This document shows, one piece after another, positions 37,487 through 51,299 of a stretch of 64,000 nucleotides of DNA. A program made the translations under genes and the position numbers. Under the pieces are notes generated by a model, which searched no databases, had not been told where the DNA came from, and saw nothing but the letters and a program-made list of their open reading frames with translations. The stretch covers positions 290,681 to 354,680 of the IMG/VR virus record IMGVR_UViG_3300032236_000747, one strand, 5' to 3'. How positions within the stretch are numbered: the stretch's first letter is position 1; every line of letters begins with the position of its first letter.

Positions 37487-37515
37487 TTGACAACATTCCT
37501 TGATTGTTGTATAAT
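37487..37515 (+). promoter_or_regulatory. Sigma70 promoter for the tmRNA precursor
   Basis: TTGACA-N17-TATAAT perfect consensus. Confidence 0.9.
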
Positions 37516-37520
37516 AAAAG

Positions 37521-37586
37521 TTATTGCTGTATGAAGCAAAGAGAAAAGTGTTCTGGACGCGGGTTCGACTCCCGCCAGGTCCACCA
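37521..37586 (+). ncRNA. ssrA: Permuted two-piece tmRNA, acceptor piece
   Basis: T-arm GCGGG-TTCGACT-CCCGC, acceptor 3' strand CAGGTCC-A-CCA. Confidence 0.93.
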
Positions 37587-37597
37587 TAAGGAAGTTT

Positions 37598-37840
37598 GTG
37601 AAAGAGTATTACATAGTTAATGGTAAAAAGTGTAAAAGAGATTCATTGCAAGATGACCTCATTTGGTCCATGAAACAATCCGATAACACTTTCAAACATT
37701 ATTGGATAGACGAACAGCAAGGATTAGGAAACAGTCACGGTGGACAATATATGCCTCCGTGGATTATGAATCGTAATCGTTATGTTGTTGATGATTTTGG
37801 AACGGTTGTAAAATATCTTCCATACAAAGTTTCTTTATGA
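37598..37840 (+). CDS. 80-aa ORF inside the tmRNA intervening segment
   Basis: AAGGA RBS plus GTG right after CCA; stop ends 1 nt before tmRNA G1. Confidence 0.7.
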   Translation: MKEYYIVNGKKCKRDSLQDDLIWSMKQSDNTFKHYWIDEQQGLGNSHGGQYMPPWIMNRNRYVVDDFGTVVKYLPYKVSL

Positions 37841-37841
37841 T

Positions 37842-38030
37842 GGGCCTGCCATGGTTTCGACAGGGCAAAGAGTAACAGAGTGGACAGCAGGGCAAAGCAG
37901 AAGCCCTTAGGGTTGGGGATTCCCGGCCGTAGACGCAAAAAAAGTAAATGCAAACGACTCACAGTTTCTAATGGTTGCCTGATAAAGGCTTCCGGGGTAG
38001 GAAATACCTTGCAACAGAAAATAACAGAAC
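37842..38030 (+). ncRNA. ssrA: Permuted two-piece tmRNA, coding piece; tag ANDSQFLMVA*
   Basis: GGGCCTG pairs with CAGGTCC giving G3.U70; GGTTTCGAC; TAAAT-GCA resume at 37950; TGA TAA at 37980-85; 3' end approximate. Confidence 0.92.
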
Positions 38031-38049
38031 CCGCTTCGGCGGGTTTCTT
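38026..38049. terminator. Bidirectional Rho-independent terminator
   Basis: AACCCGC-TTCG-GCGGGTT between convergent transcripts. Confidence 0.85.
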
Positions 38050-38728
38050 ATGTTTTCTTAGAAGCCCATTGTTTAACTGCTGGATAGTATGTTGTAAACA
38101 GTTGATGACGTTTTTTGATTTCAGCAGCAGGCGCAGCTTTTCCATTAATGGCTCTTGTAACTGAAGCAGTATCAGCAAAGTCCTTTATACGTCTTTTAAC
38201 ATTTTGATCCCAAAACCATTTAGCAATCTTTGCCGCTTCGTGGGGATCTGCTGCCTTACTAGGATGTTCAACATAATATGATTCATCGCCATGCACGCCT
38301 GCGCCAGCAGCAATATAGTTACCCTTGCCTGTTAACTGAATGAATCCACGTCCGGCATATTCCAAAGCATCATTTGCGCCTTGGTTACCTGTGCTACGTG
38401 CATATTTGTGAGCTGCTTTATTAGGCCGACCTATCTCGCCGAGGTGTTTAAAGTTACCTGTTTCTGCGCTACACTGTGCTAGAAACTGTGCTAGTTCTGT
38501 TGGCTCGGTCATACCGCTGTTAATAGCATGTGAAGACAGTATTTTACGTGCTACATCGGCATCAACTTTTGGTGCTTGAACTAGTGGTTGCACTTTTGTA
38601 CTACGTGGATCTATTTTTTGGGGATGTTGAACAGGCTTGGCTTGTGCTATACCTGCTGCCATTGCGGCTGCTCCACCAAGGAATCCCCTGCGTGTTAAAT
38701 CTTCTCTAGTAATTTCGTATATTCGCAT
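38048..38728 (-). CDS. Glycoside hydrolase family 19 (endolysin/chitinase-like) with twin-arginine-like N-terminus
   Basis: FLAQCSAETG and YAGRGFIQLTGKGNY motifs; TRRGFLGG; TAAATA-N4-ATG. Confidence 0.88.
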   Translation of the reverse strand: MRIYEITREDLTRRGFLGGAAAMAAGIAQAKPVQHPQKIDPRSTKVQPLVQAPKVDADVARKILSSHAINSGMTEPTELAQFLAQCSAETGNFKHLGEIGRPNKAAHKYARSTGNQGANDALEYAGRGFIQLTGKGNYIAAGAGVHGDESYYVEHPSKAADPHEAAKIAKWFWDQNVKRRIKDFADTASVTRAINGKAAPAAEIKKRHQLFTTYYPAVKQWASKKT

Positions 38729-42799: not shown

Positions 42800-44998
42800 A
42801 TGATTCTTAACACAGCACCACAAGACCAAGCTATTTTAAGCAACGTCGGTGAAATTGGCGACTTTAAGATTAAAGCAAGTGCCAAGGCATTCAGTATCTT
42901 GAGCTCAGGCTTGTATGCTAACAAGATCCGTGCTATTGTGCGTGAGTTGTCGTGTAATGCGGTAGACAGTCATGTGGCTGCAGGCAAAGAAGAGGTACCG
43001 TTTGAAGTACATTTGCCTAACCAACTTAGTCCACATTTTAGTGTGCGTGACTTTGGTACTGGTTTAAGCCACGAGCAAGTTACACAAATCTATACAACTT
43101 ACTTTGAAAGTACCAAGACTGACAGTAACTCCTTTATTGGTGCATTGGGCCTAGGCTCAAAGAGCCCGTTCTCTTACACAGATAACTTCACTGTTACTGC
43201 TATCAAAGATGGTCGTAAGGGCATTTACTCTGCGTTCATCAACAACGACGGTGTGCCTAGCATTGCGTTGATGATGGAAGAACAAACTGACGAACCAGCA
43301 GGTGTTGAAGTTAAGTTTGCCGTTGAAGATCGCTATGACACTTCTAAGTTTGCTGAAGAAGCTCGTCATGTGTTTATCAACTTCAAGTTGCGTCCAACTA
43401 TCCTAGGTAGCTCAGGATTCCAGTTCTATGAGCGCAAATATGAATCCAAGGACATTATTCCAGGCGTACACAACTTTACTACACGTGGCTATGATAAGAG
43501 TATTGCTGTTATGGGCAATATTGGTTATCCGATCGATGTTCCTAACGCAGAAAAGAATCTAGGTGAACTAGAAAACTTGTTGAGCTGTGGTTTGGAAATG
43601 CACTTTGCTATCGGTGAGCTTGACTTCCAAGCAAGCCGCGAAGGTTTGTCATACATTCCTAGTACCATTGAAGCTATTCGTAAAAAGTTAAAAGATGTTA
43701 ATGAAGCATTAACTGTAGTGTTAGCTAAAGAAGCAGACGCTATTGTTAATCTCTGGGAACGTGCAGACTTTTTGAATCGTCGTTCAAACAACTATCTGTG
43801 GCGAGCCGCTGTTGAGAAATATGTAACTGACTCGAAATTTGAGTTGATTGAAAAGACTCATAACTATTTGCGTACACGAGTATTTGAACTCGGTGTATCC
43901 GATCTGGCATCTAAGTTCAATATTTCATTAAACGGCTTTATCAAACAACAGAGTTATTCAGCTTGTACTAAGATGAGTTCTCACAGCAAGAGCATCGGCC
44001 CTGACCCTGATCGTCCTGGTTATTACCTTACTAAACAAGTGTGGGACGTTAGTGCCAGTTTAGACACGGGCTTTGTAATCAACGATACAAAAGTTGGTGC
44101 CACAGAGCGTGCCAAGTATCATTGGAGAAATACTCCCCGCAAGAATGATGACGGTACAACTATTCCTTCAAATGTCTTTGTGTTAGAAAAAGCTGACCGT
44201 AGTAAAGAAATGAAACTCAAGGAATTCTTTGATTACATTTCTAGTCCACCAACTGCCAATGTCTTTACGGCATCTGATTTGAAGGAAAAGCCACGCCAAA
44301 CATCATCTGCCTTGGGTCGTAATGTTAGCCTAATGCGCATGGAAGAACGTGGCATGGGCGGTTACTATCGTGAAAAGGAAATGGTATGGCGTGATGCTGG
44401 AAAGCTCGACTCTTACGACAATAGCAAGACCTACTACTATTTGCCTTTGAGTGGATACACTGTTCAAAGTGCGTATGGGTACACTAGTGCTACAGAGATG
44501 TATAAAGATCTCAACGAGTGTGGTATCGGTGGTTTGATTCCAGAAACTGTTTTTGGTGTTCGTAAGATCGACATCGAAGCTGTTAAGGCCAAGAAGAACT
44601 GGGTCAACCTTGAAAAGTTTGTTTTGGATAAACTGACCAAGCAGAATCCCAATGATTTGATGTCGTTGGCTGTTAGTGCCATTGACGACTACGAAAGAGT
44701 CAAGTATAATAGTAAGATCGTCAACAAAGTCTCTGATCCTAAGAGTCCGTACTCGGTATTGGCAAATAAGTTCAAAGGCGTAACAGCAAAACGTTACAGT
44801 AGTCATCGTTTGAATAGTGTGTGTTCTAAGTTTATTCCTAAGAACCCTATTAATCCAGACAAGATTATTGCATCGTTTGTTAAAGAATCAAAGGATGTGA
44901 TTGCCCGGTATCCTTTGTTAGAAATCATGCGTTCGGATTCGAAACATGAAGCAGTGGCAGAGTACATTAACATGATTGACGCAAAGAAAGGTGTCTAA
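42800..44998 (+). CDS. rIIA: T4 rIIA-like protein (N-terminal GHKL/HSP90-like ATPase)
   Basis: RELSCNAVDSH, VRDFGTGL, STK, GALGLGSKSPF motifs; adjacent rIIB-like gene. Confidence 0.88.
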   Translation: MILNTAPQDQAILSNVGEIGDFKIKASAKAFSILSSGLYANKIRAIVRELSCNAVDSHVAAGKEEVPFEVHLPNQLSPHFSVRDFGTGLSHEQVTQIYTTYFESTKTDSNSFIGALGLGSKSPFSYTDNFTVTAIKDGRKGIYSAFINNDGVPSIALMMEEQTDEPAGVEVKFAVEDRYDTSKFAEEARHVFINFKLRPTILGSSGFQFYERKYESKDIIPGVHNFTTRGYDKSIAVMGNIGYPIDVPNAEKNLGELENLLSCGLEMHFAIGELDFQASREGLSYIPSTIEAIRKKLKDVNEALTVVLAKEADAIVNLWERADFLNRRSNNYLWRAAVEKYVTDSKFELIEKTHNYLRTRVFELGVSDLASKFNISLNGFIKQQSYSACTKMSSHSKSIGPDPDRPGYYLTKQVWDVSASLDTGFVINDTKVGATERAKYHWRNTPRKNDDGTTIPSNVFVLEKADRSKEMKLKEFFDYISSPPTANVFTASDLKEKPRQTSSALGRNVSLMRMEERGMGGYYREKEMVWRDAGKLDSYDNSKTYYYLPLSGYTVQSAYGYTSATEMYKDLNECGIGGLIPETVFGVRKIDIEAVKAKKNWVNLEKFVLDKLTKQNPNDLMSLAVSAIDDYERVKYNSKIVNKVSDPKSPYSVLANKFKGVTAKRYSSHRLNSVCSKFIPKNPINPDKIIASFVKESKDVIARYPLLEIMRSDSKHEAVAEYINMIDAKKGV

Positions 44999-45231
44999 TG
45001 AAAACATTTGATACATTTGAAGAGGTAGTAGAAATGCTACCTTGTATGAAAAAACCGATTGTAGTTCACACAAAGCGTATTGACGAAGAGTTTCGAGTTA
45101 ATACACTGGAAGGTAATTACAAACAAGGCAAGCCCGGAGACTATTTGATGAAGGGCATCGACGGAGAGTTGTATATTTGCGACGGTCCGATTTTTGAGAA
45201 AACTTACGATATTTTGAAAGAAGGCAAGTAA
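44998..45231 (+). CDS. Small hypothetical protein (PGDY-motif)
   Basis: TLEG...GKPGDYLMKGIDGELY. Confidence 0.7.
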   Translation: MKTFDTFEEVVEMLPCMKKPIVVHTKRIDEEFRVNTLEGNYKQGKPGDYLMKGIDGELYICDGPIFEKTYDILKEGK

Positions 45232-45232
45232 A

Positions 45233-46042
45233 ATGGCATACCCATATTTGATCCAAGGTAAGAACATTGTTGTTGTTATTGGCAATAACAGTCATACTAT
45301 TAACAAGAGTCACATTAACTATCAGAAGGTTCTTGATGCTATTAAAGCTGATGATTGGGACACAGTTAAGAATGTGATTGAACCACAGAAGGTTGTCCTT
45401 AACTATGGCGCTGGCAATATCAGCATCAAAGGTGATGTACTGTATTGGAAGAATGAAGAACTTCATACTAGCCTTACAGTTCGTATCATCGAGATGTTGG
45501 AAGAAGGCTTTCCGATTGAGCCAATGGTTAACTTTATGGAAAACTTGATGTCTAACCCAAGTAAGCGTGCCGTTAGTGAGTTGTATGGTTTCTTGTCAAA
45601 GAATAACTTGCCAATCACTCCAGATGGTCACTTCTTGGCCTACAAGAAAGTACGCGATACTTACTTCGACGTCCACAGCAACACCATGGACAATAGCGTT
45701 GGTAAAGTTCTTGAAATGGAACGTAATCAAGTTGACGATGATCAGAACAATACTTGTTCAACAGGTCTGCACTTCTGTAGTCAAAGCTATTTGAATCACT
45801 TTGGTGGAGAGCGTACAGTTATTGTTAAGATCAATCCACGTGACGTTGTAAGTATTCCTACTGACTACAATGACAGCAAAGGTCGCACTTGCCGCTATGA
45901 AGTTATCGGCGAGTTGGGCGTTGATGCCGACGAAGCGTTTACAGCGCCTGTACAAGAAAATGCCAATCAACCAGTGTTTGATAATGTCAACTACGGTGCT
46001 GGTACTTCAAACATGCCATTTGGTTCTCCAAACGGTGGTTAA
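45233..46042 (+). CDS. rIIB: T4 rIIB-like protein
   Basis: ITPDGHFLAYKKV, MERNQVDDD, CSTGLHFCS, VKINPRDVVSIPTDYN..KGRTCRYEV. Confidence 0.88.
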   Translation: MAYPYLIQGKNIVVVIGNNSHTINKSHINYQKVLDAIKADDWDTVKNVIEPQKVVLNYGAGNISIKGDVLYWKNEELHTSLTVRIIEMLEEGFPIEPMVNFMENLMSNPSKRAVSELYGFLSKNNLPITPDGHFLAYKKVRDTYFDVHSNTMDNSVGKVLEMERNQVDDDQNNTCSTGLHFCSQSYLNHFGGERTVIVKINPRDVVSIPTDYNDSKGRTCRYEVIGELGVDADEAFTAPVQENANQPVFDNVNYGAGTSNMPFGSPNGG

Positions 46043-46065
46043 AAAAGGGGCTTAGACCCCTTTTT
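46041..46065 (+). terminator. Rho-independent terminator
   Basis: AAAAAAGGGG/CCCCTTTTT. Confidence 0.75.
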
Positions 46066-46338
46066 ATGTTGTAAAAGGACAGCGCGGTAAGGTTGGCGCC
46101 CGTGGCAAAATGTAACTCGGATTCCATAGGATGCGGCGATGCTTAAATGCTCCCCGAGGTAGAATATGCCTAAGTTACGATCAACCCTTCCAGCAGTCGG
46201 GAAAAAGCGAAAACGCGAAAGCGGTCAGTAAAGGTTGGCAAATATGGACAAGGCACCCGCTTTTAGGAACCCCCATATAACCGTTGTAAAACTGGCAAGT
46301 GAGGTTACCACCGGTCAAATCCAAGACTGCTACAACAT
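46066..46338 (+). ncRNA. Candidate large (about 270 nt) structured RNA of unknown class
   Basis: ORF-free, GC-rich; terminal stem ATGTTGTA/TACAACAT and nested long-range stems. Confidence 0.65.
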
Positions 46339-46357
46339 ATTTTGAATAATAAATCAC

Positions 46358-46415
46358 TTTACAACGTGATTAAATGATAGTATAATAAATACATACAGCA
46401 AAGAGATAGACTCTG
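46358..46415 (+). promoter_or_regulatory. Composite sigma70/late promoter plus GAUAGAC-loop leader hairpin
   Basis: TTTACA-N17-TATAAT overlapping TAAATA; AATCAC-N8-GTGATT palindrome; AGAG-ATAGA-CTCT hairpin. Confidence 0.7.
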
Positions 46416-46441
46416 AGCACATTTATACAAAGGATTTTTGT

Positions 46442-47461
46442 ATGTCAAAACAATATAACACTCTAGTCCTCATCGGACGTTTTCAACCCTTACACAATGC
46501 TCACCTTGAGATTATCAAGCGAGCCACAGCACTTACAGATGAACTAGTTATCATCGCTGGTAGCGCAAACCAACCACGTACTTATAAGAACCCGTTTACG
46601 TTTGATGAGCGTGTTGCAATGATCAAGGCTGCTACTAGCGGTTTAGCAATGCGGGTCCATGTTGAATCTAACATTGATACTATCTATAATGATCAAGCAT
46701 GGGCAGTTCGTATCCAAAGCATTGTTAGCAAGTACCGTGTCCTAGGTGGTCGTACTGCTGTTATCGGTCATAAGAAAGATGCTAGCTCATTCTACTTGGA
46801 TATGTTCCCCCAATGGGAATACGTAGATGTAGAAAAGATCGAGCCACTGGGTGCCACTGACATCCGAGACTTGTACTTCAAACAAAGTTTCAACAGCAAC
46901 TTTATTAAGAATGTTGTTCCAACTACTACCTACGACTTCTTAATGGAATTCCGCCAAACCGAAGAGTTCCAACAAATCATTCGTGAGCGTGAGTTCGTCG
47001 AAACCTACAAGAAGCAGTATGCTAGTTTGCCATATCCTCCAATCTTCAGTACTGCTGACGCTGTTGTTATTCAAAGCGGCCACGTGCTAATGATTAAACG
47101 TAGAGCAGAGCCAGGTAAGGGCCTGTGGGCATTGCCAGGTGGTTACGTTAACGCTAACACAGACCGTACAGTAGAAGATGCCGCTATCCGTGAACTCCGT
47201 GAGGAAACAATGATTAAGGTGCCTGCGCCTGTACTGCGTGGCAACATTGTTCGCAGTAAAGTATTTGATGCTATTGACCGTAGCCCACGTGGACGCATTA
47301 TTACACACGCCTTCTTTATCCAACTGCCAGATGGTGAGTTGCCTCGAGTAAAAGGTAGCGACGATGCTGAGAAAGCACGTTGGGTTCCGATCGCAGAGGT
47401 CAAATCAGAGGAATGCTTTGAAGACCACTACGAAATCATTCAACACTTTCTTGGAGCATAA
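46442..47461 (+). CDS. natV: Bifunctional NMN adenylyltransferase / Nudix ADP-ribose pyrophosphatase (NadM-Nudix)
   Basis: GRFQPLHNAH (HxGH-like), GSAN..KNPF, GATDIR; Nudix box GGYV..EDAAIRELREETM. Confidence 0.95.
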   Translation: MSKQYNTLVLIGRFQPLHNAHLEIIKRATALTDELVIIAGSANQPRTYKNPFTFDERVAMIKAATSGLAMRVHVESNIDTIYNDQAWAVRIQSIVSKYRVLGGRTAVIGHKKDASSFYLDMFPQWEYVDVEKIEPLGATDIRDLYFKQSFNSNFIKNVVPTTTYDFLMEFRQTEEFQQIIREREFVETYKKQYASLPYPPIFSTADAVVIQSGHVLMIKRRAEPGKGLWALPGGYVNANTDRTVEDAAIRELREETMIKVPAPVLRGNIVRSKVFDAIDRSPRGRIITHAFFIQLPDGELPRVKGSDDAEKARWVPIAEVKSEECFEDHYEIIQHFLGA

Positions 47462-47462
47462 T

Positions 47463-47792
47463 ATGAACTGGAAAGTTAAAATCAAGCTAGATGATATTAC
47501 ATACGGTCCTAAAGATGAAGAACTCGACGAGCTGACTGTAATGACCTTTGCTCATGAACTTATGAAGCAAGGCTATCGCAAGACCAGTAATGCCTACTGC
47601 ATGGTTAGTCGCATTGATCGTAAAGATTGGGTAGAAGTTATGGCTAAAGAGCGTCACTGTAGTGTAGCAGACTTTTACAATCTAGACGGTAGCGGAATAA
47701 GAGACAGCCACCGTGATCATTATATTCGTTGTTTCAGCAACGACACACTAACTGTGCATCCGTTGATTCACAGAAAAATGAAAGGTTATTAA
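47463..47792 (+). CDS. Hypothetical protein
   Basis: ATG after GGAG; 109 aa. Confidence 0.7.
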   Translation: MNWKVKIKLDDITYGPKDEELDELTVMTFAHELMKQGYRKTSNAYCMVSRIDRKDWVEVMAKERHCSVADFYNLDGSGIRDSHRDHYIRCFSNDTLTVHPLIHRKMKGY

Positions 47793-47943
47793 AATGAAAG
47801 ATAAGATAGACATAGCGGTTTTTATCTGTTTATTTGTAGCTCTCTATGTTAACCTAACAAGTATTCCTAAGAAAGAATATCCTCGAGAAGTGCGTGGAGC
47901 ATTGATAAGATTAGAAACAAAATGAAAGGTTATTAAAATGAAA
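47775..47943 (+). repeat. Pair of 25-bp direct repeats (47775-47799, 47919-47943) flanking a 43-aa ORF
   Basis: AAAATGAAAGGTTATTAAAATGAAA twice. Confidence 0.9.
47794..47925 (+). CDS. Small membrane protein (43 aa)
   Basis: MKDKIDIAVFICLFVALYVNLTSIPKK... Confidence 0.55.
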   Translation: MKDKIDIAVFICLFVALYVNLTSIPKKEYPREVRGALIRLETK

Positions 47944-48129
47944 TTTATTTTAGTTGCGTATTTGATATCAGGCGTACCTAGTACAGGAATGTCTATTAAC
48001 TGGGAAGTCAAGGGTGATTATGACACAAGGGCTGAATGTATCTACGCAAGATCACAGTTGATTAAATCTGTTCAAACAGGACCTAAGAAAAAATACGAAT
48101 GCCACGCCATGGAGGTAAGTGTAGAATGA
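47938..48129 (+). CDS. Small hypothetical protein with two Cys
   Basis: 63 aa; hydrophobic N-terminus. Confidence 0.6.
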   Translation: MKFILVAYLISGVPSTGMSINWEVKGDYDTRAECIYARSQLIKSVQTGPKKKYECHAMEVSVE

Positions 48130-48605
48130 CACTAAAGCACACAAAAGGTAATCTCCTCAACCTAGCAGAAGCAGGCGAGTTTGATGTTGTGGTACAAGGC
48201 TGTAATTGCTTTAACACAATGGGTGGTGGTATTGCTCGAGAGATTCGCGAACGCTATCCTCATGTAGCCGCAGTAGACAGCAAAACTGTTCGCGGTGACT
48301 ACAACAAGTTAGGCACGTGGACCAGTGAAAATGTTATTGTAAAAAATGGTACAGTTACATTTGATATTATCAACGCCTACACTCAATACAATATGAGTAC
48401 AGGTGAAGATGTATTTGAGTATACTGCTTTCTTGTTGATTCTAGAAAAACTTTTATACGCTCACGGCGATAAACGAATTGGCTTGCCATACATTGGTATG
48501 GGACTAGCAGGTGGTGATCGAGAAACGATCATTCCGATGATTGAGGAATTTGCCTACCGTGTTGCTGATAAAGGTGGTACAGTCACTTTGGTAGAATTTG
48601 GTTGA
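48126..48605 (+). CDS. Macrodomain (ADP-ribose binding/hydrolase) protein
   Basis: KGNLL..DVVVQGCNCFNTMGGGIA..IINAYTQ..LPYIGMGLAGG; ATGA-coupled start. Confidence 0.9.
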   Translation: MTLKHTKGNLLNLAEAGEFDVVVQGCNCFNTMGGGIAREIRERYPHVAAVDSKTVRGDYNKLGTWTSENVIVKNGTVTFDIINAYTQYNMSTGEDVFEYTAFLLILEKLLYAHGDKRIGLPYIGMGLAGGDRETIIPMIEEFAYRVADKGGTVTLVEFG

Positions 48606-48659
48606 CACAATAATGATGTTGTGTTATGCTGATAACAAGTCCACTAGATAGACTGGTGG
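48602..48659 (+). promoter_or_regulatory. Sigma70 promoter plus GAUAGAC-loop leader hairpin
   Basis: TTGACA-N17-TATGCT with TG extension; ACACAA-N8-TTGTGT palindrome; CCACTAG-ATAGA-CTGGTGG. Confidence 0.75.
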
Positions 48660-48683
48660 CATTTTAAATAAAGGAACTTTATT

Positions 48684-50081
48684 ATGAAACTCGCAAAAAA
48701 CATTATTCTGAACACTGACTCATACAAAGTGAGCATGTTCAAACAATACCCAGCAGGTACTACAGGTGTATATTCTTACATTGAATCACGAGGCGGACGT
48801 TACGATCAGACAGTATTCTTCGGACTCCAAGCGTTCATTAAAGAGTACTTACTCGACCCCATCACACAGGCAGACATTGATGTGGCTGACGAAATCCTTA
48901 CCGCGCACGGTGAGCCTTTCAACCGAGCAGGATGGCAATACATTCTTGACAAGCACAATGGACGCCTCCCAGTTGTCATTCGGGCCGTCCCTGAAGGAAC
49001 ACTTGTACCTGTCAAAAACGTACTCGCTACTATTGAAAACACTGACCCAGAATGCTTCTGGTTAACTACTTGGCTTGAAACAGCCTTGCTTCGTGCTATT
49101 TGGTATCCTACCACAGTAGCTACTCAATCTTACACAATCAAGAAAGTTATTCTTGACTATTTGGAGAAAACAGGTGAAACTAGTACAATCAATTTTAAAC
49201 TGCACGATTTCGGTGCTCGTGGTGTATCTAGCTTTGAGTCAGCGGGCATCGGAGGCGCAGCACACTTGGTTAACTTCATGGGTAGTGATACTATTTCTGG
49301 TGTTCTTTATGCTCGTGAATACTATGATGCTGGGATTGCAGGTTTTAGTATCCCTGCCGCCGAGCACTCAACAATCACTAGTTGGGGCCGTGCTGGTGAA
49401 GTCGATGCCTACAGAAACATGCTCAAACAGTTTGGACGAGAAGGATCAATCTTCGCAGTTGTCTCCGACAGTTACGACATTTTCAATGCCGCAAGCAAAC
49501 TCTGGGGTGAAGAACTCCGAGATGAAGTAATCGCTAGCGGAGCAACAGTTGTTATTCGACCAGACAGCGGTGATCCTGTTACTGTTAACCGTCAGTTGAT
49601 TGCTATCTTAGATCAAAAGTTTGGACACACAGTTAACAGCAAAGGATTCAAAGTCCTTAACAATGTTCGCCTCATTCAAGGAGATGGTGTAAATGAACTT
49701 ACTATTCGCGGGATTCTGGGTGCTTTTATGGCTCTTGGGTATAGTGCTGATAATATTGCTTTTGGCATGGGTGGAGCGTTGTTGCAAATCGTGGACCGCG
49801 ACACACAACGATTCGCAATGAAGTGCAGTTCCATGCAAGTGGGCGATAAGTGGGTAGATGTACAAAAAGATCCAATCACTGACGCCGGTAAGAAGTCTAA
49901 AGCAGGTAGTGTAACTCTTTGGGAGAGCGGTGGAGAATGGGTAAGTGCTGTTGATCAACCAAAAGGTTGGACAGATAAAGGATTTGGCCCATTCACCGAA
50001 ATGCTTGAAGAAGTTTACCGTGATGGTCGCCTAATCAAAGAAATTACTTTTGACCAGGTTCGGGCAAACAGCAATAAATAA
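48684..50081 (+). CDS. nadV: Nicotinamide phosphoribosyltransferase (NAMPT)
   Basis: TDSYKVS, LHDFGARG, IPAAEHSTIT, VVSDSYD, VVIRPDSGDP, LIQGDGV motifs. Confidence 0.97.
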   Translation: MKLAKNIILNTDSYKVSMFKQYPAGTTGVYSYIESRGGRYDQTVFFGLQAFIKEYLLDPITQADIDVADEILTAHGEPFNRAGWQYILDKHNGRLPVVIRAVPEGTLVPVKNVLATIENTDPECFWLTTWLETALLRAIWYPTTVATQSYTIKKVILDYLEKTGETSTINFKLHDFGARGVSSFESAGIGGAAHLVNFMGSDTISGVLYAREYYDAGIAGFSIPAAEHSTITSWGRAGEVDAYRNMLKQFGREGSIFAVVSDSYDIFNAASKLWGEELRDEVIASGATVVIRPDSGDPVTVNRQLIAILDQKFGHTVNSKGFKVLNNVRLIQGDGVNELTIRGILGAFMALGYSADNIAFGMGGALLQIVDRDTQRFAMKCSSMQVGDKWVDVQKDPITDAGKKSKAGSVTLWESGGEWVSAVDQPKGWTDKGFGPFTEMLEEVYRDGRLIKEITFDQVRANSNK

Positions 50082-50674: not shown

Positions 50675-50923
50675 ATGACCTACGCTGAATATTTCGACCT
50701 AGTAACCTATAAAGCAACATATCACCTAGGTGATAGAATCATAGGTAAGCATAATGGTATTCCATTTGTAGGCACTGTTGGCAATGATAGACAACTTAAT
50801 CCAACGGAAGGTCCACGTATTAGTGTTCATTTAGATTTGCCATTAAAGGTTGACGGAACAGTTAAATGTGTTATACTAGTTAAACACAAAGATGTTAAAC
50901 GTCTTAAAGAATTAAGCGTCTGA
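50675..50923 (+). CDS. Hypothetical SH3-like small protein
   Basis: 82 aa; last 8 nt overlap tRNA 5' end. Confidence 0.6.
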   Translation: MTYAEYFDLVTYKATYHLGDRIIGKHNGIPFVGTVGNDRQLNPTEGPRISVHLDLPLKVDGTVKCVILVKHKDVKRLKELSV

Positions 50924-50990
50924 GGCTAAGTGGTATTGCAAGGGCTTCTAAAACCCGAGACAGCAGGTTCGAACCCTGTCAGGCGCACCA
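50916..50990 (+). tRNA. tRNA with CUA anticodon (amber suppressor-like)
   Basis: 75 nt; GCGTCTG/CAGGCGC-ACCA acceptor; D-loop AGTGGTA; loop TTCTAAA; T-loop TTCGAAC; anticodon stem only 3 WC pairs. Confidence 0.75.
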
Positions 50991-51005: not shown

Positions 51006-51299
51006 ATGAATGTAACTGTAATGGGTGATCGTGTATTGATCAAACGAGTTGTTAATGAAGCTAAAACAACAGGCGGTATTATTTTCTCCTGGAATGGTGA
51101 AGATAAAACCAGCGAAGGGATTGTAATGGAAGTTGGTCCTGGCCATAAGACTGACGAAGATATTATTATTCCTACAGGTGTTGAAGTTGGAGACAGAGTT
51201 CTCTATAATGTCACAGCTGGTGTACCAGTAAAGGTAGACGGCGAGGATATGACTATGTTAAAAGCAGAAGATATCTACGCTGTAGTTGGAGAAGAGTAA
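51006..51299 (+). CDS. groES: Co-chaperonin GroES
   Basis: GDRVLIKR..TTGGII..VMEVGPG..VGDRVLY. Confidence 0.93.
   Translation: MNVTVMGDRVLIKRVVNEAKTTGGIIFSWNGEDKTSEGIVMEVGPGHKTDEDIIIPTGVEVGDRVLYNVTAGVPVKVDGEDMTMLKAEDIYAVVGEE

What the first reader, a model, noticed from the sequence alone, without database searches (positions are those of the whole stretch)
46066..46338. About 270-nt highly structured orphan RNA between rIIB and the NAD salvage operon
Seen: an ORF-free GC-rich segment closed by ATGTTGTA/TACAACAT. Domain A has AAGGTTGG/TCAACCCTT, GTAAC/GTTAC and TCGG/CCGA. Domain B is closed by GCAGTC/GACTGC (46193-98/46325-30) and contains CGC-GAAA-GCG, AAAGCGG/CCGCTTT and ACTGG/CCGGT. TGGCAA occurs three times and AAGGTTGGC twice. 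I could not match it to tRNA, tmRNA, RNase P, group I intron or common riboswitch consensus. It is a candidate new large phage ncRNA or ribozyme.
Basis: partly seen in the sequence, partly recalled or inferred. Interest (0 to 1): 0.72.

Follow-up and report, generated by a model that had tools for sequence, protein, structure and literature searches.

The report
New structured RNA of freshwater jumbo phages
The 270-base gap after rIIB holds a real, previously undescribed folded RNA gene. About 20 related freshwater phage contigs carry it, usually just after an amber-suppressor tRNA and a tmRNA, and its function is still unknown.

Summary
The segment 46066-46339 (+ strand) is a genuine, conserved, structured non-coding RNA gene. 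It matches no Rfam 15 family, even at E<=10, and it is not a tRNA or tmRNA.

Folding energy alone is not better than shuffles. Pattern scans did find about 20 full-length homologs, 16 of them distinct, in freshwater viral and metagenome contigs. These give strong covariation:
- 61 proposed pairs are 94.8% canonical.
- 19 pairs carry compensatory changes, against 10.1 +/- 1.7 in shuffles.
- The tool count on the 5' half shows 100% paired cells and a covariation score of 0.246 against 0.110.

The fold is a closing helix P1 around an H-type pseudoknot that carries two large inserted domains, an invariant GAAA hairpin and a CCUAAG receptor-like loop.

In relatives the RNA lies on the tRNA strand, 1-480 nt downstream of a tRNA(CUA) that follows a permuted tmRNA, or inside an 18-tRNA array. 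It was not found in GenBank phages, in two pattern scans of prokaryote genomes, or in cultured jumbo relatives.

Function is inferred only: a stable trans-acting RNA released by tRNA processing.

The parts
46042..46065 (.). rIIB terminator-like hairpin AAAAAGGGG-CTTAGA-CCCCTTTTT. It is the left border of the RNA cassette and is symmetric, so it could terminate on either strand.
   Evidence: inverted repeat I3. The simple terminator scan did not call it.
46066..46339 (+). The structured RNA gene: a new family of about 260-290 nt.
   Evidence: nhmmer finds full-length homologs at E 1e-52 to 1e-78. Alignments are A2 and A3. The strand follows from conserved G-U pairs and from the strand of adjacent tRNAs.
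46068..46072 (+). P1 5' strand (GUUGU). It pairs with 46332-46336. In this phage only, the helix extends to 46065-73/46331-39.
   Evidence: GC:12 AU:3 GU:1; CG:13 UA:3; AU:15 UA:1.
46073..46081 (+). Nearly invariant single-stranded joiner AAAAGGACA.
   Evidence: Invariant columns.
46082..46085 (+). Pseudoknot helix, 5' strand (GCGC). It pairs with 46207-46210. This helix crosses stem B.
   Evidence: G46084-C46208 is GC:12 / AU:4 with no exception. The tool count gives GC:11 AU:5 (helix 1).
46086..46191 (+). Domain A. It has a basal stem 46086-98/46178-91, an invariant internal loop CCCGU (46099-103) / UAAGUUA (46171-77) that contains CCUAAG, a GGC/GCC helix 46104-06/46168-70, and a variable apical three-way junction 46107-46167 with stem 46116-20/46154-58.
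   Evidence: Pairs 46092/46185 (GC:10 AU:6) and 46093/46184 (UA:6 GC:6 AU:4) are. The resemblance to a tetraloop receptor is recalled from memory and was not tested.
46192..46201 (+). Stem B 5' strand (AGCAGUCGGG). It pairs with 46320-46331, with an AA bulge at 46323-24.
   Evidence: The core is invariant. The outer pairs vary (AU:6 GU:6 GC:4; GC:9 AU:3 GU:4).
46202..46206 (+). Invariant AAAAA linker between stem B 5' and the pseudoknot 3' strand.
46207..46210 (+). Pseudoknot helix, 3' strand (GCGA here, GCGC or GUGC in relatives).
46214..46223 (+). Invariant hairpin CGC-GAAA-GCG (GNRA tetraloop). L149 carries a 13-nt insertion that lengthens this hairpin.
46224..46296 (+). Domain C. It has stem GUCAGU 46224-29 / ACUGGC 46291-96, stem GGUU 46233-36 / AACC 46279-82, and a variable terminal hairpin (here AUAUGG 46243-48 / CCAUAU 46273-78).
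   Evidence: Pair 46229/46291 is UA:7 CG:7 AU:1 GU:1. Pair 46233/46282 is GC:10 GU:4 AU:1.
46299..46311 (+). Three-bp 3' hairpin GUG/CAC with a 7-nt loop, RGG conserved.
   Evidence: Pairs are GC:13 AU:2 and GC:12 CG:1 AU:2.
46320..46336 (+). Stem B 3' strand (46320-31) followed directly by the P1 3' strand (46332-36).
46340..46345 (+). T-rich tail after P1 (TTTTGA). A T-run follows P1 in 13 of 16 homologs.
   Evidence: last alignment block.
46337..46441 (+). Conserved promoter and 5' UTR of the NMNAT/Nudix (NatV-like) gene. This is the right border of the cassette. The sigma70-like promoter is TTTACA-17-TATAAT at 46358-46386.
   Evidence: Homology to more than 50 related loci starts at about 46337-46342.

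Best explanation
46066-46339 (+) encodes a stand-alone, trans-acting, compactly folded stable RNA of a new family.

Shown:
- The sequence is conserved as an RNA fold. A closing helix P1 encloses an H-type pseudoknot formed by a 4-bp helix and the 10-bp stem B. Domain A is inserted in the first pseudoknot loop. A GAAA hairpin, domain C and a small hairpin are inserted in the third loop.
- In related phages the RNA sits on the tRNA strand, directly after an amber-suppressor tRNA(CUA) and a permuted tmRNA, or between two tRNAs of a large array.

Inferred:
- The RNA is made as part of tRNA-type polycistronic transcripts.
- It is freed by the enzymes that trim tRNAs: RNase P at the next tRNA's 5' end, and 3'-end processing of the preceding tRNA.
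- P1 then seals both ends against exonucleases.
- The invariant junctions around the pseudoknot form a binding or active pocket.
- It works together with the phage's own translation RNAs (tRNAs, suppressor tRNA, tmRNA) during host takeover, most likely by binding a translation-related partner.

In this phage, rearrangement has moved the cassette between the rIIB terminator and the NatV promoter. Expression here would need read-through of that terminator.
For: - No known family: Rfam at gathering and at E<=10; ARAGORN; RF00028 and RF00010 find nothing in the whole phage genome.
- Homologs: about 20 contigs, 16 distinct sequences, 69-70% mean column identity, with invariant blocks and length-variable hairpins.
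- Covariation: RNAalifold gives 44 pairs, 10 of them compensatory. My own count gives 61 pairs, 94.8% canonical, 19 compensatory against 10.1 +/- 1.7 in shuffles (0 of 500 reach it) and 30-40% canonical when partners are slid. The tool count on the 5' half gives 100% paired cells and a score of 0.246 against 0.110 +/- 0.012, with slid controls <=0.063.
- Strand: conserved G-U pairs (GU:13, UG:15, UG:13) would be C-A on the other strand. The RNA is on the same strand as the neighbouring tRNAs in every locus where one is near.
- Context: tRNA(CUA) lies 1-480 nt upstream in 11 loci, 5 of them also with an upstream tmRNA. In L149 the RNA fills the gap between tRNA-Glu (ends 10546) and tRNA-Tyr (starts 10822). 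This phage has the same tmRNA (37494-38073) and tRNA(CUA) (50916-50987).
- Not coding: stops in all frames, no tblastx match, and indels that are not multiples of 3.
- Retained intact despite reshuffled flanks.
- Conserved 31-mers occur in 11 freshwater metatranscriptome runs, and contigs 85-100% identical to 46074-46241 occur in RNA run X16.
Against: - No direct transcript ends or abundance were obtained. RNA-library contigs may come from DNA carry-over, and most of them are from relatives rather than this phage.
- In this window there is no promoter between the rIIB terminator and P1, so expression here is uncertain.
- MFE is no better than shuffles.
- Only about 16 distinct, related sequences were available, so several compensatory changes may be single events inherited by a clade.
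- For C46191 three alternative partners fit equally well.
- The link to the suppressor tRNA is not strict. L175 and L176 have tRNA(CUA) but no element within 2.5 kb. In six loci no tRNA lies within 1.2 kb.
- The translation-related function is inference from neighbourhood only.
Confidence: 0.6

Rival explanations
1. It is a ribozyme. The pseudoknot core has the same strand order as the P3/P7 core of group I introns: helix 5' strand, large inserted domain, second helix 5' strand, short A-rich linker, first helix 3' strand, hairpin(s), second helix 3' strand. It catalyses self-processing or another RNA reaction within tRNA transcripts.
For: The crossing helices are supported by covariation. Invariant junction nucleotides are concentrated around the pseudoknot, and there is a GAAA tetraloop plus a CCUAAG loop. 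The size and complexity are typical of large ribozymes (my own knowledge).
Against: Rfam Intron_gpI and RNase P models give nothing at E<=10. The RNA is not inserted in any gene; in L149 it lies between two complete tRNAs. There are no identifiable splice-site features, and J3/4- and J6/7-like joiners are absent because the helices abut with no linker. No cleavage data exist.
Confidence: 0.12
2. It is a small counterpart of GOLLD and ROOL: a phage RNA near tRNA islands that works as an RNA-only homo-oligomeric assembly.
For: The genomic niche is the same. GOLLD and ROOL are encoded in phages and prophages, often near tRNA islands, and their functions are unknown (PMC12286853). No conserved protein partner lies next to it; the frequent downstream ORF is a small membrane protein with its own SD.
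Against: It has no sequence or structure match to the GOLLD or ROOL Rfam models. It is 2-3 times smaller.
Confidence: 0.12
3. It is an anti-defence decoy or sponge, for example for a tRNA- or RNA-targeting host nuclease, carried with the tRNA set.
For: It co-localises with tRNA genes. Its distribution among close relatives is patchy: absent from G001-G005, L175-L177 and cultured relatives. Patchy distribution is typical of accessory counter-defence genes (my own knowledge).
Against: There is no tRNA-like element in it and no evidence for any target.
Confidence: 0.08
4. It is a cis-regulatory leader or riboswitch for the gene downstream.
For: A P1-closed multi-helix aptamer-like architecture is followed by a T-run in 13 of 16 homologs. 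In 10 loci a small ORF starts 18-31 nt downstream.
Against: The downstream neighbour differs between loci: the NatV promoter here, tRNA-Tyr in L149, other genes in L143, L144 and L159. In this window a complete promoter lies between the RNA and the next gene. The upstream partner (tRNA) is the more constant one.
Confidence: 0.05
5. It is non-functional DNA: a decayed gene or a MITE-like mobile remnant bounded by a 9-bp inverted repeat.
For: The 9-bp terminal inverted repeat. The cassette sits flush between a terminator and a conserved promoter in a rearranged region. MFE is not significant.
Against: Compensatory changes maintain more than 10 helices. There is a single copy per genome. It has no coding similarity. 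Only the inner 5 bp of the terminal repeat are conserved as a pairing, not as a sequence.
Confidence: 0.03

Closest known systems
GOLLD and ROOL RNAs (large ornate ncRNAs of phages and prophages)
   Same: They are phage-encoded and lie next to or inside tRNA islands. They have multi-domain pseudoknotted folds, no known protein partner and unknown function (PMC12286853; context here).
   Different: The Rfam models do not match. This RNA is about 260 nt, against about 580 and 800 nt. The secondary structure is different, and oligomeric state was not tested.
Group I intron catalytic core (P3/P7 pseudoknot with P4-P6 domain)
   Same: The strand order of the two crossing helices is the same, with a large domain inserted in the first loop. 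There is also a GNRA tetraloop and a CCUAAG receptor-like loop (the comparison itself is from memory).
   Different: It is not in a gene, has no exons, and has no P1/P2 substrate helix or omega-G. The ends are closed by a terminal helix. RF00028 gives nothing.
Phage T4 species 1 and 2 stable RNAs (rnaC/rnaD) in the tRNA cluster
   Same: They are small stable RNAs of unknown function, co-transcribed with phage tRNAs and released by tRNA-processing enzymes (my own knowledge).
   Different: blastn shows no similarity to any GenBank phage, T4-like phages included. This RNA is about twice as long and is pseudoknotted.
RNase P RNA
   Same: It has a terminal helix pairing the 5' and 3' ends, a long-range pseudoknot and an association with tRNA genes.
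   Different: There are no CR-I to CR-V motifs and the order of crossing strands is different. RF00010 and all other Rfam RNase P models give nothing.

Membership tests
Any Rfam 15 family (4227 models) | Covariance-model match at or near the gathering score | tested here: not met
   The whole window at gathering gives only tmRNA_permuted and tRNA, both elsewhere. The 551-nt and 286-nt stretches at E<=10 give no hit inside the element.
Group I intron | Match to RF00028 | tested here: not met
   The control genomes ring.
Group I intron | Inserted in a host gene whose exons are joined after excision | tested here: not met
   It is intergenic. In L149 it lies between complete tRNA-Glu and tRNA-Tyr. 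Here it lies between a terminator and a promoter.
Group I intron | P3/P7-type pseudoknot enclosing a P4-P6-like domain | tested here: inconclusive
   The crossing helices have the same strand order and are supported by covariation. Homology of the helices cannot be shown.
Group I intron | Self-splicing with a guanosine cofactor | not testable with these tools
   Needs a bench assay.
RNase P RNA | Match to RF00010, RF00011, RF00373 or RF02357, and the conserved regions CR-I to CR-V | tested here: not met
   By eye, GAGGAAAGUCC and ACAGAA motifs are absent from the sequence.
GOLLD / ROOL | Match to the Rfam GOLLD or ROOL models | tested here: not met
GOLLD / ROOL | Phage-encoded and adjacent to tRNA genes | tested here: met
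GOLLD / ROOL | Homo-oligomeric RNA-only assembly | not testable with these tools
   Complex prediction refuses RNA-only jobs.
tRNA / tmRNA | Cloverleaf or tRNA-like domain detectable by ARAGORN or Rfam | tested here: not met
Riboswitch / cis leader | Constant position upstream of one gene family | tested here: not met
   The downstream neighbours differ.
Protein-coding gene or pseudogene | Open frame or translated similarity | tested here: not met
   Stops in all six frames and no tblastx hit in 170 related loci or in its own genome. Indels are not multiples of three.

The most novel reading that the evidence does not exclude
The RNA is a new class of large natural ribozyme or RNA machine. It is built on a group-I-like pseudoknot core but is free-standing. 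It acts on the phage's tRNA/tmRNA set, for example by processing, modifying or sequestering the amber-suppressor tRNA or ribosomes.
Probability: 0.15. Interest if true: 0.9.

Novelty: categorically new. Interest (0 to 1): 0.68.

Why it matters
Large, highly conserved, pseudoknotted RNAs with no known relatives are rare. In the past they have turned out to be ribozymes, riboswitch-like sensors or RNA-only assemblies.

This one is compact, at about 260 nt. It has a well-supported fold, an unambiguous strand and a telling neighbourhood: tmRNA, an amber-suppressor tRNA and tRNA arrays of uncultured freshwater jumbo phages. That makes it directly usable for in vitro structure probing, cryo-EM and activity screens.

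It also adds a third, unrelated RNA class to the puzzle of why phages keep large structured RNAs in their tRNA islands, alongside GOLLD and ROOL. 'Categorically new' applies here to the RNA family and its fold. The genomic niche is already known.

Tried and rejected
1. Anchoring on the flanking genes. 52 rIIB loci and 80 NatV loci have no homolog of the element; homology starts only at the NatV promoter. The RNA is therefore not tied to this position.
2. blastn against GenBank phages gave nothing.
3. Five large related viral records, G001-G005, have no element. A DNA search with this phage's tRNA(CUA) found no homolog in them, though all have the permuted tmRNA. ARAGORN found no tRNA, and model R1 found no element, within about 1.5 kb of their tmRNAs.
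4. Prokaryote genomes were scanned with two patterns. One gave 0 hits. The other gave 35 hits, all chance matches in GC-rich coding DNA.
5. L161 and L165 from the metagenome scan are chance matches.
A 143-position model of the 5' half, R1, was used instead. It finds nothing in XacN1, Xoo-sp13, PA5oct, RsoM2USA or G001, while it scores 152 bits in the phage's own genome.
7. Search for a conserved protein partner. The neighbours are unannotated small proteins. The commonest downstream ORF is a one-TM membrane protein. This phage lacks a clear copy of it.
8. A 'specifier-like' UAG in the domain C loop was considered and rejected. The loop varies across homologs (UUGAG, UUGGG, UUAGG, UUGAA).
10. 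Literature searches found no description of this RNA.

Full report
**Setting.** The window is the last 64 kb of a 354,680-bp IMG/VR virus record that CheckV rates as complete. Genome GC is 0.404. Upstream of the finding lie rIIA (42800-44998), a 77-aa PGDYG ORF and rIIB (45233-46042). Downstream lie a bifunctional NMN adenylyltransferase/Nudix gene (46442-47461) and a NAMPT gene (48684-50081). After the rIIB stop comes a symmetric hairpin AAAAAGGGG/CCCCTTTTT at 46042-46065. A near-consensus promoter, TTTACA-17-TATAAT, lies at 46358-46386. The finding fills the space between the two.

**Checking the observation.**
- The stretch has stops in all six frames and no translated similarity to its own genome or to 170 related loci.
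- GC is 0.48-0.49, and AT skew is strongly positive at 0.25-0.31, unlike the coding flanks.
- Thermodynamics does not support 'highly structured'. The MFE is -71.6 kcal/mol against -75.4 +/- 5.2 for dinucleotide shuffles (z = +0.74). The minus strand gives z = -0.54.
- No Rfam 15 family matches. The gathering scan of the window finds only a permuted tmRNA (37525-37982) and a tRNA (50916-50987). E<=10 scans of 551 nt and of 286 nt find nothing inside the element. ARAGORN finds no tRNA or tmRNA there.

**Finding relatives.**
- Anchoring on the flanking genes failed in an informative way. 52 rIIB loci and 80 NatV loci from IMG/VR share no similarity with 46066-46336. More than 50 of them align from about 46337 onward, which is the NatV promoter and 5' UTR. 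In those relatives the NAD genes lie upstream of rIIA, so the region has been rearranged in this phage.
- The breakthrough came from public reads. Logan contigs of a freshwater metagenome (X2) and a freshwater metatranscriptome (X16) match 46074-46241 at 85-100% identity. The match falls in blocks separated by divergent stretches.
- Patterns taken from these blocks retrieved full-length homologs. Seven came from IMG/VR contigs and twelve from metagenome contigs. nhmmer E-values were 1e-46 to 1e-81 with the first profile and 3e-52 to 4e-78 with the 16-sequence profile.
- Two pattern hits, L161 and L165, are chance.

**Structure.** Sixteen distinct sequences align with 69-70% mean column identity. 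About 40% of columns are invariant, and the hairpins vary in length. RNAalifold predicts 44 pairs, 10 with compensatory double changes.

I refined the model by eye and tested it with a script. In window coordinates:
- P1: 46068-72 / 46332-36.
- A pseudoknot helix: 46082-85 / 46207-10.
- Domain A: basal stem 46086-98 / 46178-91; an invariant internal loop CCCGU / UAAGUUA; a GGC/GCC helix; a variable apical three-way junction.
- Stem B: 46192-201 / 46320-31, with an AA bulge.
- An invariant AAAAA linker.
- An invariant CGC-GAAA-GCG hairpin.
- Domain C: 46224-29 / 46291-96 and 46233-36 / 46279-82, plus a variable hairpin.
- A 3-bp hairpin with a conserved RGG loop: 46299-311.

Statistics:
- Of 61 pairs, 94.8% of cells are canonical.
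- 19 pairs show changes on both sides, against 10.1 +/- 1.7 in 500 partner shuffles; none of the 500 reaches 19.
- When partners are slid by 1-3 columns, 30-40% of cells are canonical.
- The independent tool count used a model-derived alignment of the 5' 150 nt. It gives 100% paired cells, a covariation score of 0.246 against 0.110 +/- 0.012 (0 of 500), and slid controls <=0.063.
- The pseudoknot pair G46084-C46208 switches to A-U in four sequences without exception. The tool count on 17 matches gives five.

Conserved G-U pairs fix the + strand as the RNA strand. The duplicated AAGGTTGGC is simply the 5' strand of two different stems and is not conserved as a repeat.

The CCUAAG in the invariant loop matches half of the classical 11-nt GAAA-tetraloop receptor, and the GAAA hairpin is invariant. 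I recall this from the literature. I could not test it, and L149 has lost the GAAA loop while keeping the CCUAAG loop.

**Context in relatives.**
- The RNA is always on the strand of nearby tRNAs.
- In 11 loci a tRNA with anticodon CUA (amber suppressor) lies 1-480 nt upstream. In five of these a permuted tmRNA lies just before that tRNA.
- In L143, L166, L169 and L170 only 1-6 nt separate the tRNA's CCA end from P1.
- In L149 the RNA occupies the gap between tRNA-Glu (ends 10546) and tRNA-Tyr (starts 10822) in an 18-tRNA array.
- This phage has the homologous tRNA(CUA) at 50916-50987, which Rfam finds and ARAGORN misses. It has the tmRNA at 37494-38073. The three genes are now dispersed, with rIIA/B and the NAD genes between them.
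- The element has stayed intact through this reshuffling, which argues for selection.

**Distribution.** It is patchy.
- Five related large records, G001-G005, have the tmRNA. A DNA search found no tRNA(CUA) homolog and no element in them.
- L175 and L176 have tRNA(CUA) but no element within 2.5 kb.
- Nothing was found in GenBank phages, in XacN1, Xoo-sp13, PA5oct or RsoM2USA with model R1 (positive control), or in 185,579 prokaryote genomes with two patterns.

**Expression.** Eleven freshwater metatranscriptome runs from several studies hold exact 31-mers of the element. X16 contains contigs of several variants. This is suggestive only, because RNA libraries can carry DNA and I could not lay more reads.

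**Mechanism.**
- Shown: a conserved, pseudoknotted fold on the tRNA strand, inside tRNA/tmRNA gene clusters, with no coding capacity and no constant downstream gene.
- Inferred: it is co-transcribed with tRNAs and released by tRNA-processing enzymes, and P1 protects its ends. It then acts in trans with the phage's translation RNAs.
- In this phage it has no promoter of its own between the rIIB terminator and P1. It would depend on terminator read-through.
- A T-run follows P1 in 13 of 16 homologs and may mark the 3' end.
- Rival readings cannot be separated computationally: a ribozyme with a group-I-like core topology, a GOLLD/ROOL-like RNA-only assembly, or an anti-defence decoy. A cis-regulatory role and a junk/MITE origin are disfavoured by the variable downstream context and by covariation.

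**Comparison with known systems.** By niche it resembles GOLLD and ROOL, which are phage RNAs near tRNA islands with unknown function (PMC12286853), and the T4 stable RNAs of the tRNA cluster. By topology it resembles the P3/P7 core of group I introns. It fails the membership tests for all of them. I therefore regard it as a new RNA family in a known niche.

**Limits.**
- Only 16 related sequences were available.
- No tree-aware significance test was run.
- The full-length covariance model could not be built.
- Oligomerisation, catalysis and partners are untested.

Noticed in passing
window 37494-38073 (+): A permuted (two-piece) tmRNA gene with tag peptide AKKVNANDSQFLMVA. It scores 106.9 bits against Rfam RF04321. 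All five large related phage records also carry one.
   Followed up: partly
window 50916-50987 (+): An amber-suppressor tRNA (anticodon CUA), homologous to the tRNA(CUA) upstream of the element in relatives. Rfam finds it at 46 bits, but ARAGORN misses it in this window.
   Followed up: partly
whole genome G000: TAG is almost never used as a stop. Of 160 ORFs of at least 200 aa, 119 end in TAA, 39 in TGA and 2 in TAG. This fits a phage that carries an amber suppressor. There is no sign of widespread in-frame TAG recoding.
   Followed up: partly
window 46337-46441: The NatV promoter and 5' UTR are conserved at 80-94% DNA identity in more than 50 related loci. They are present at high depth in metatranscriptome X6. 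A palindrome, AATCAC-N8-GTGATT (46352-46371), overlaps the -35 box and looks like an operator. This could be a regulatory element of the NAD salvage genes.
   Followed up: no
window 42800-50081 vs loci L004, L011, L032, L022/L063: The gene order differs from relatives. There the order is NatV...NadV-rIIA-rIIB; here it is rIIA-rIIB-element-NatV...NadV. A 77-aa PGDYG-domain ORF (44998-45231) sits between rIIA and rIIB here and in L037.
   Followed up: no
window 51006-51299 (+): By eye, this 97-aa ORF looks like a GroES-type co-chaperonin (MNV..GDRVLIKR..GGI). It lies next to the suppressor tRNA and was not searched.
   Followed up: no
genome G000:C1:307-9703: The main tRNA cluster of this phage (13 tRNAs) lies at the other end of the linear record. 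It would be adjacent to the window if the genome is circularly permuted.
   Followed up: no
L157, L158, L160, L163, L164, L167, L169-L172 (18-31 nt after the element): A conserved 73-93-aa single-pass membrane protein with its own AAGGAAG ribosome-binding site follows the RNA in 10 loci. This phage has only a weak partial match elsewhere.
   Followed up: partly
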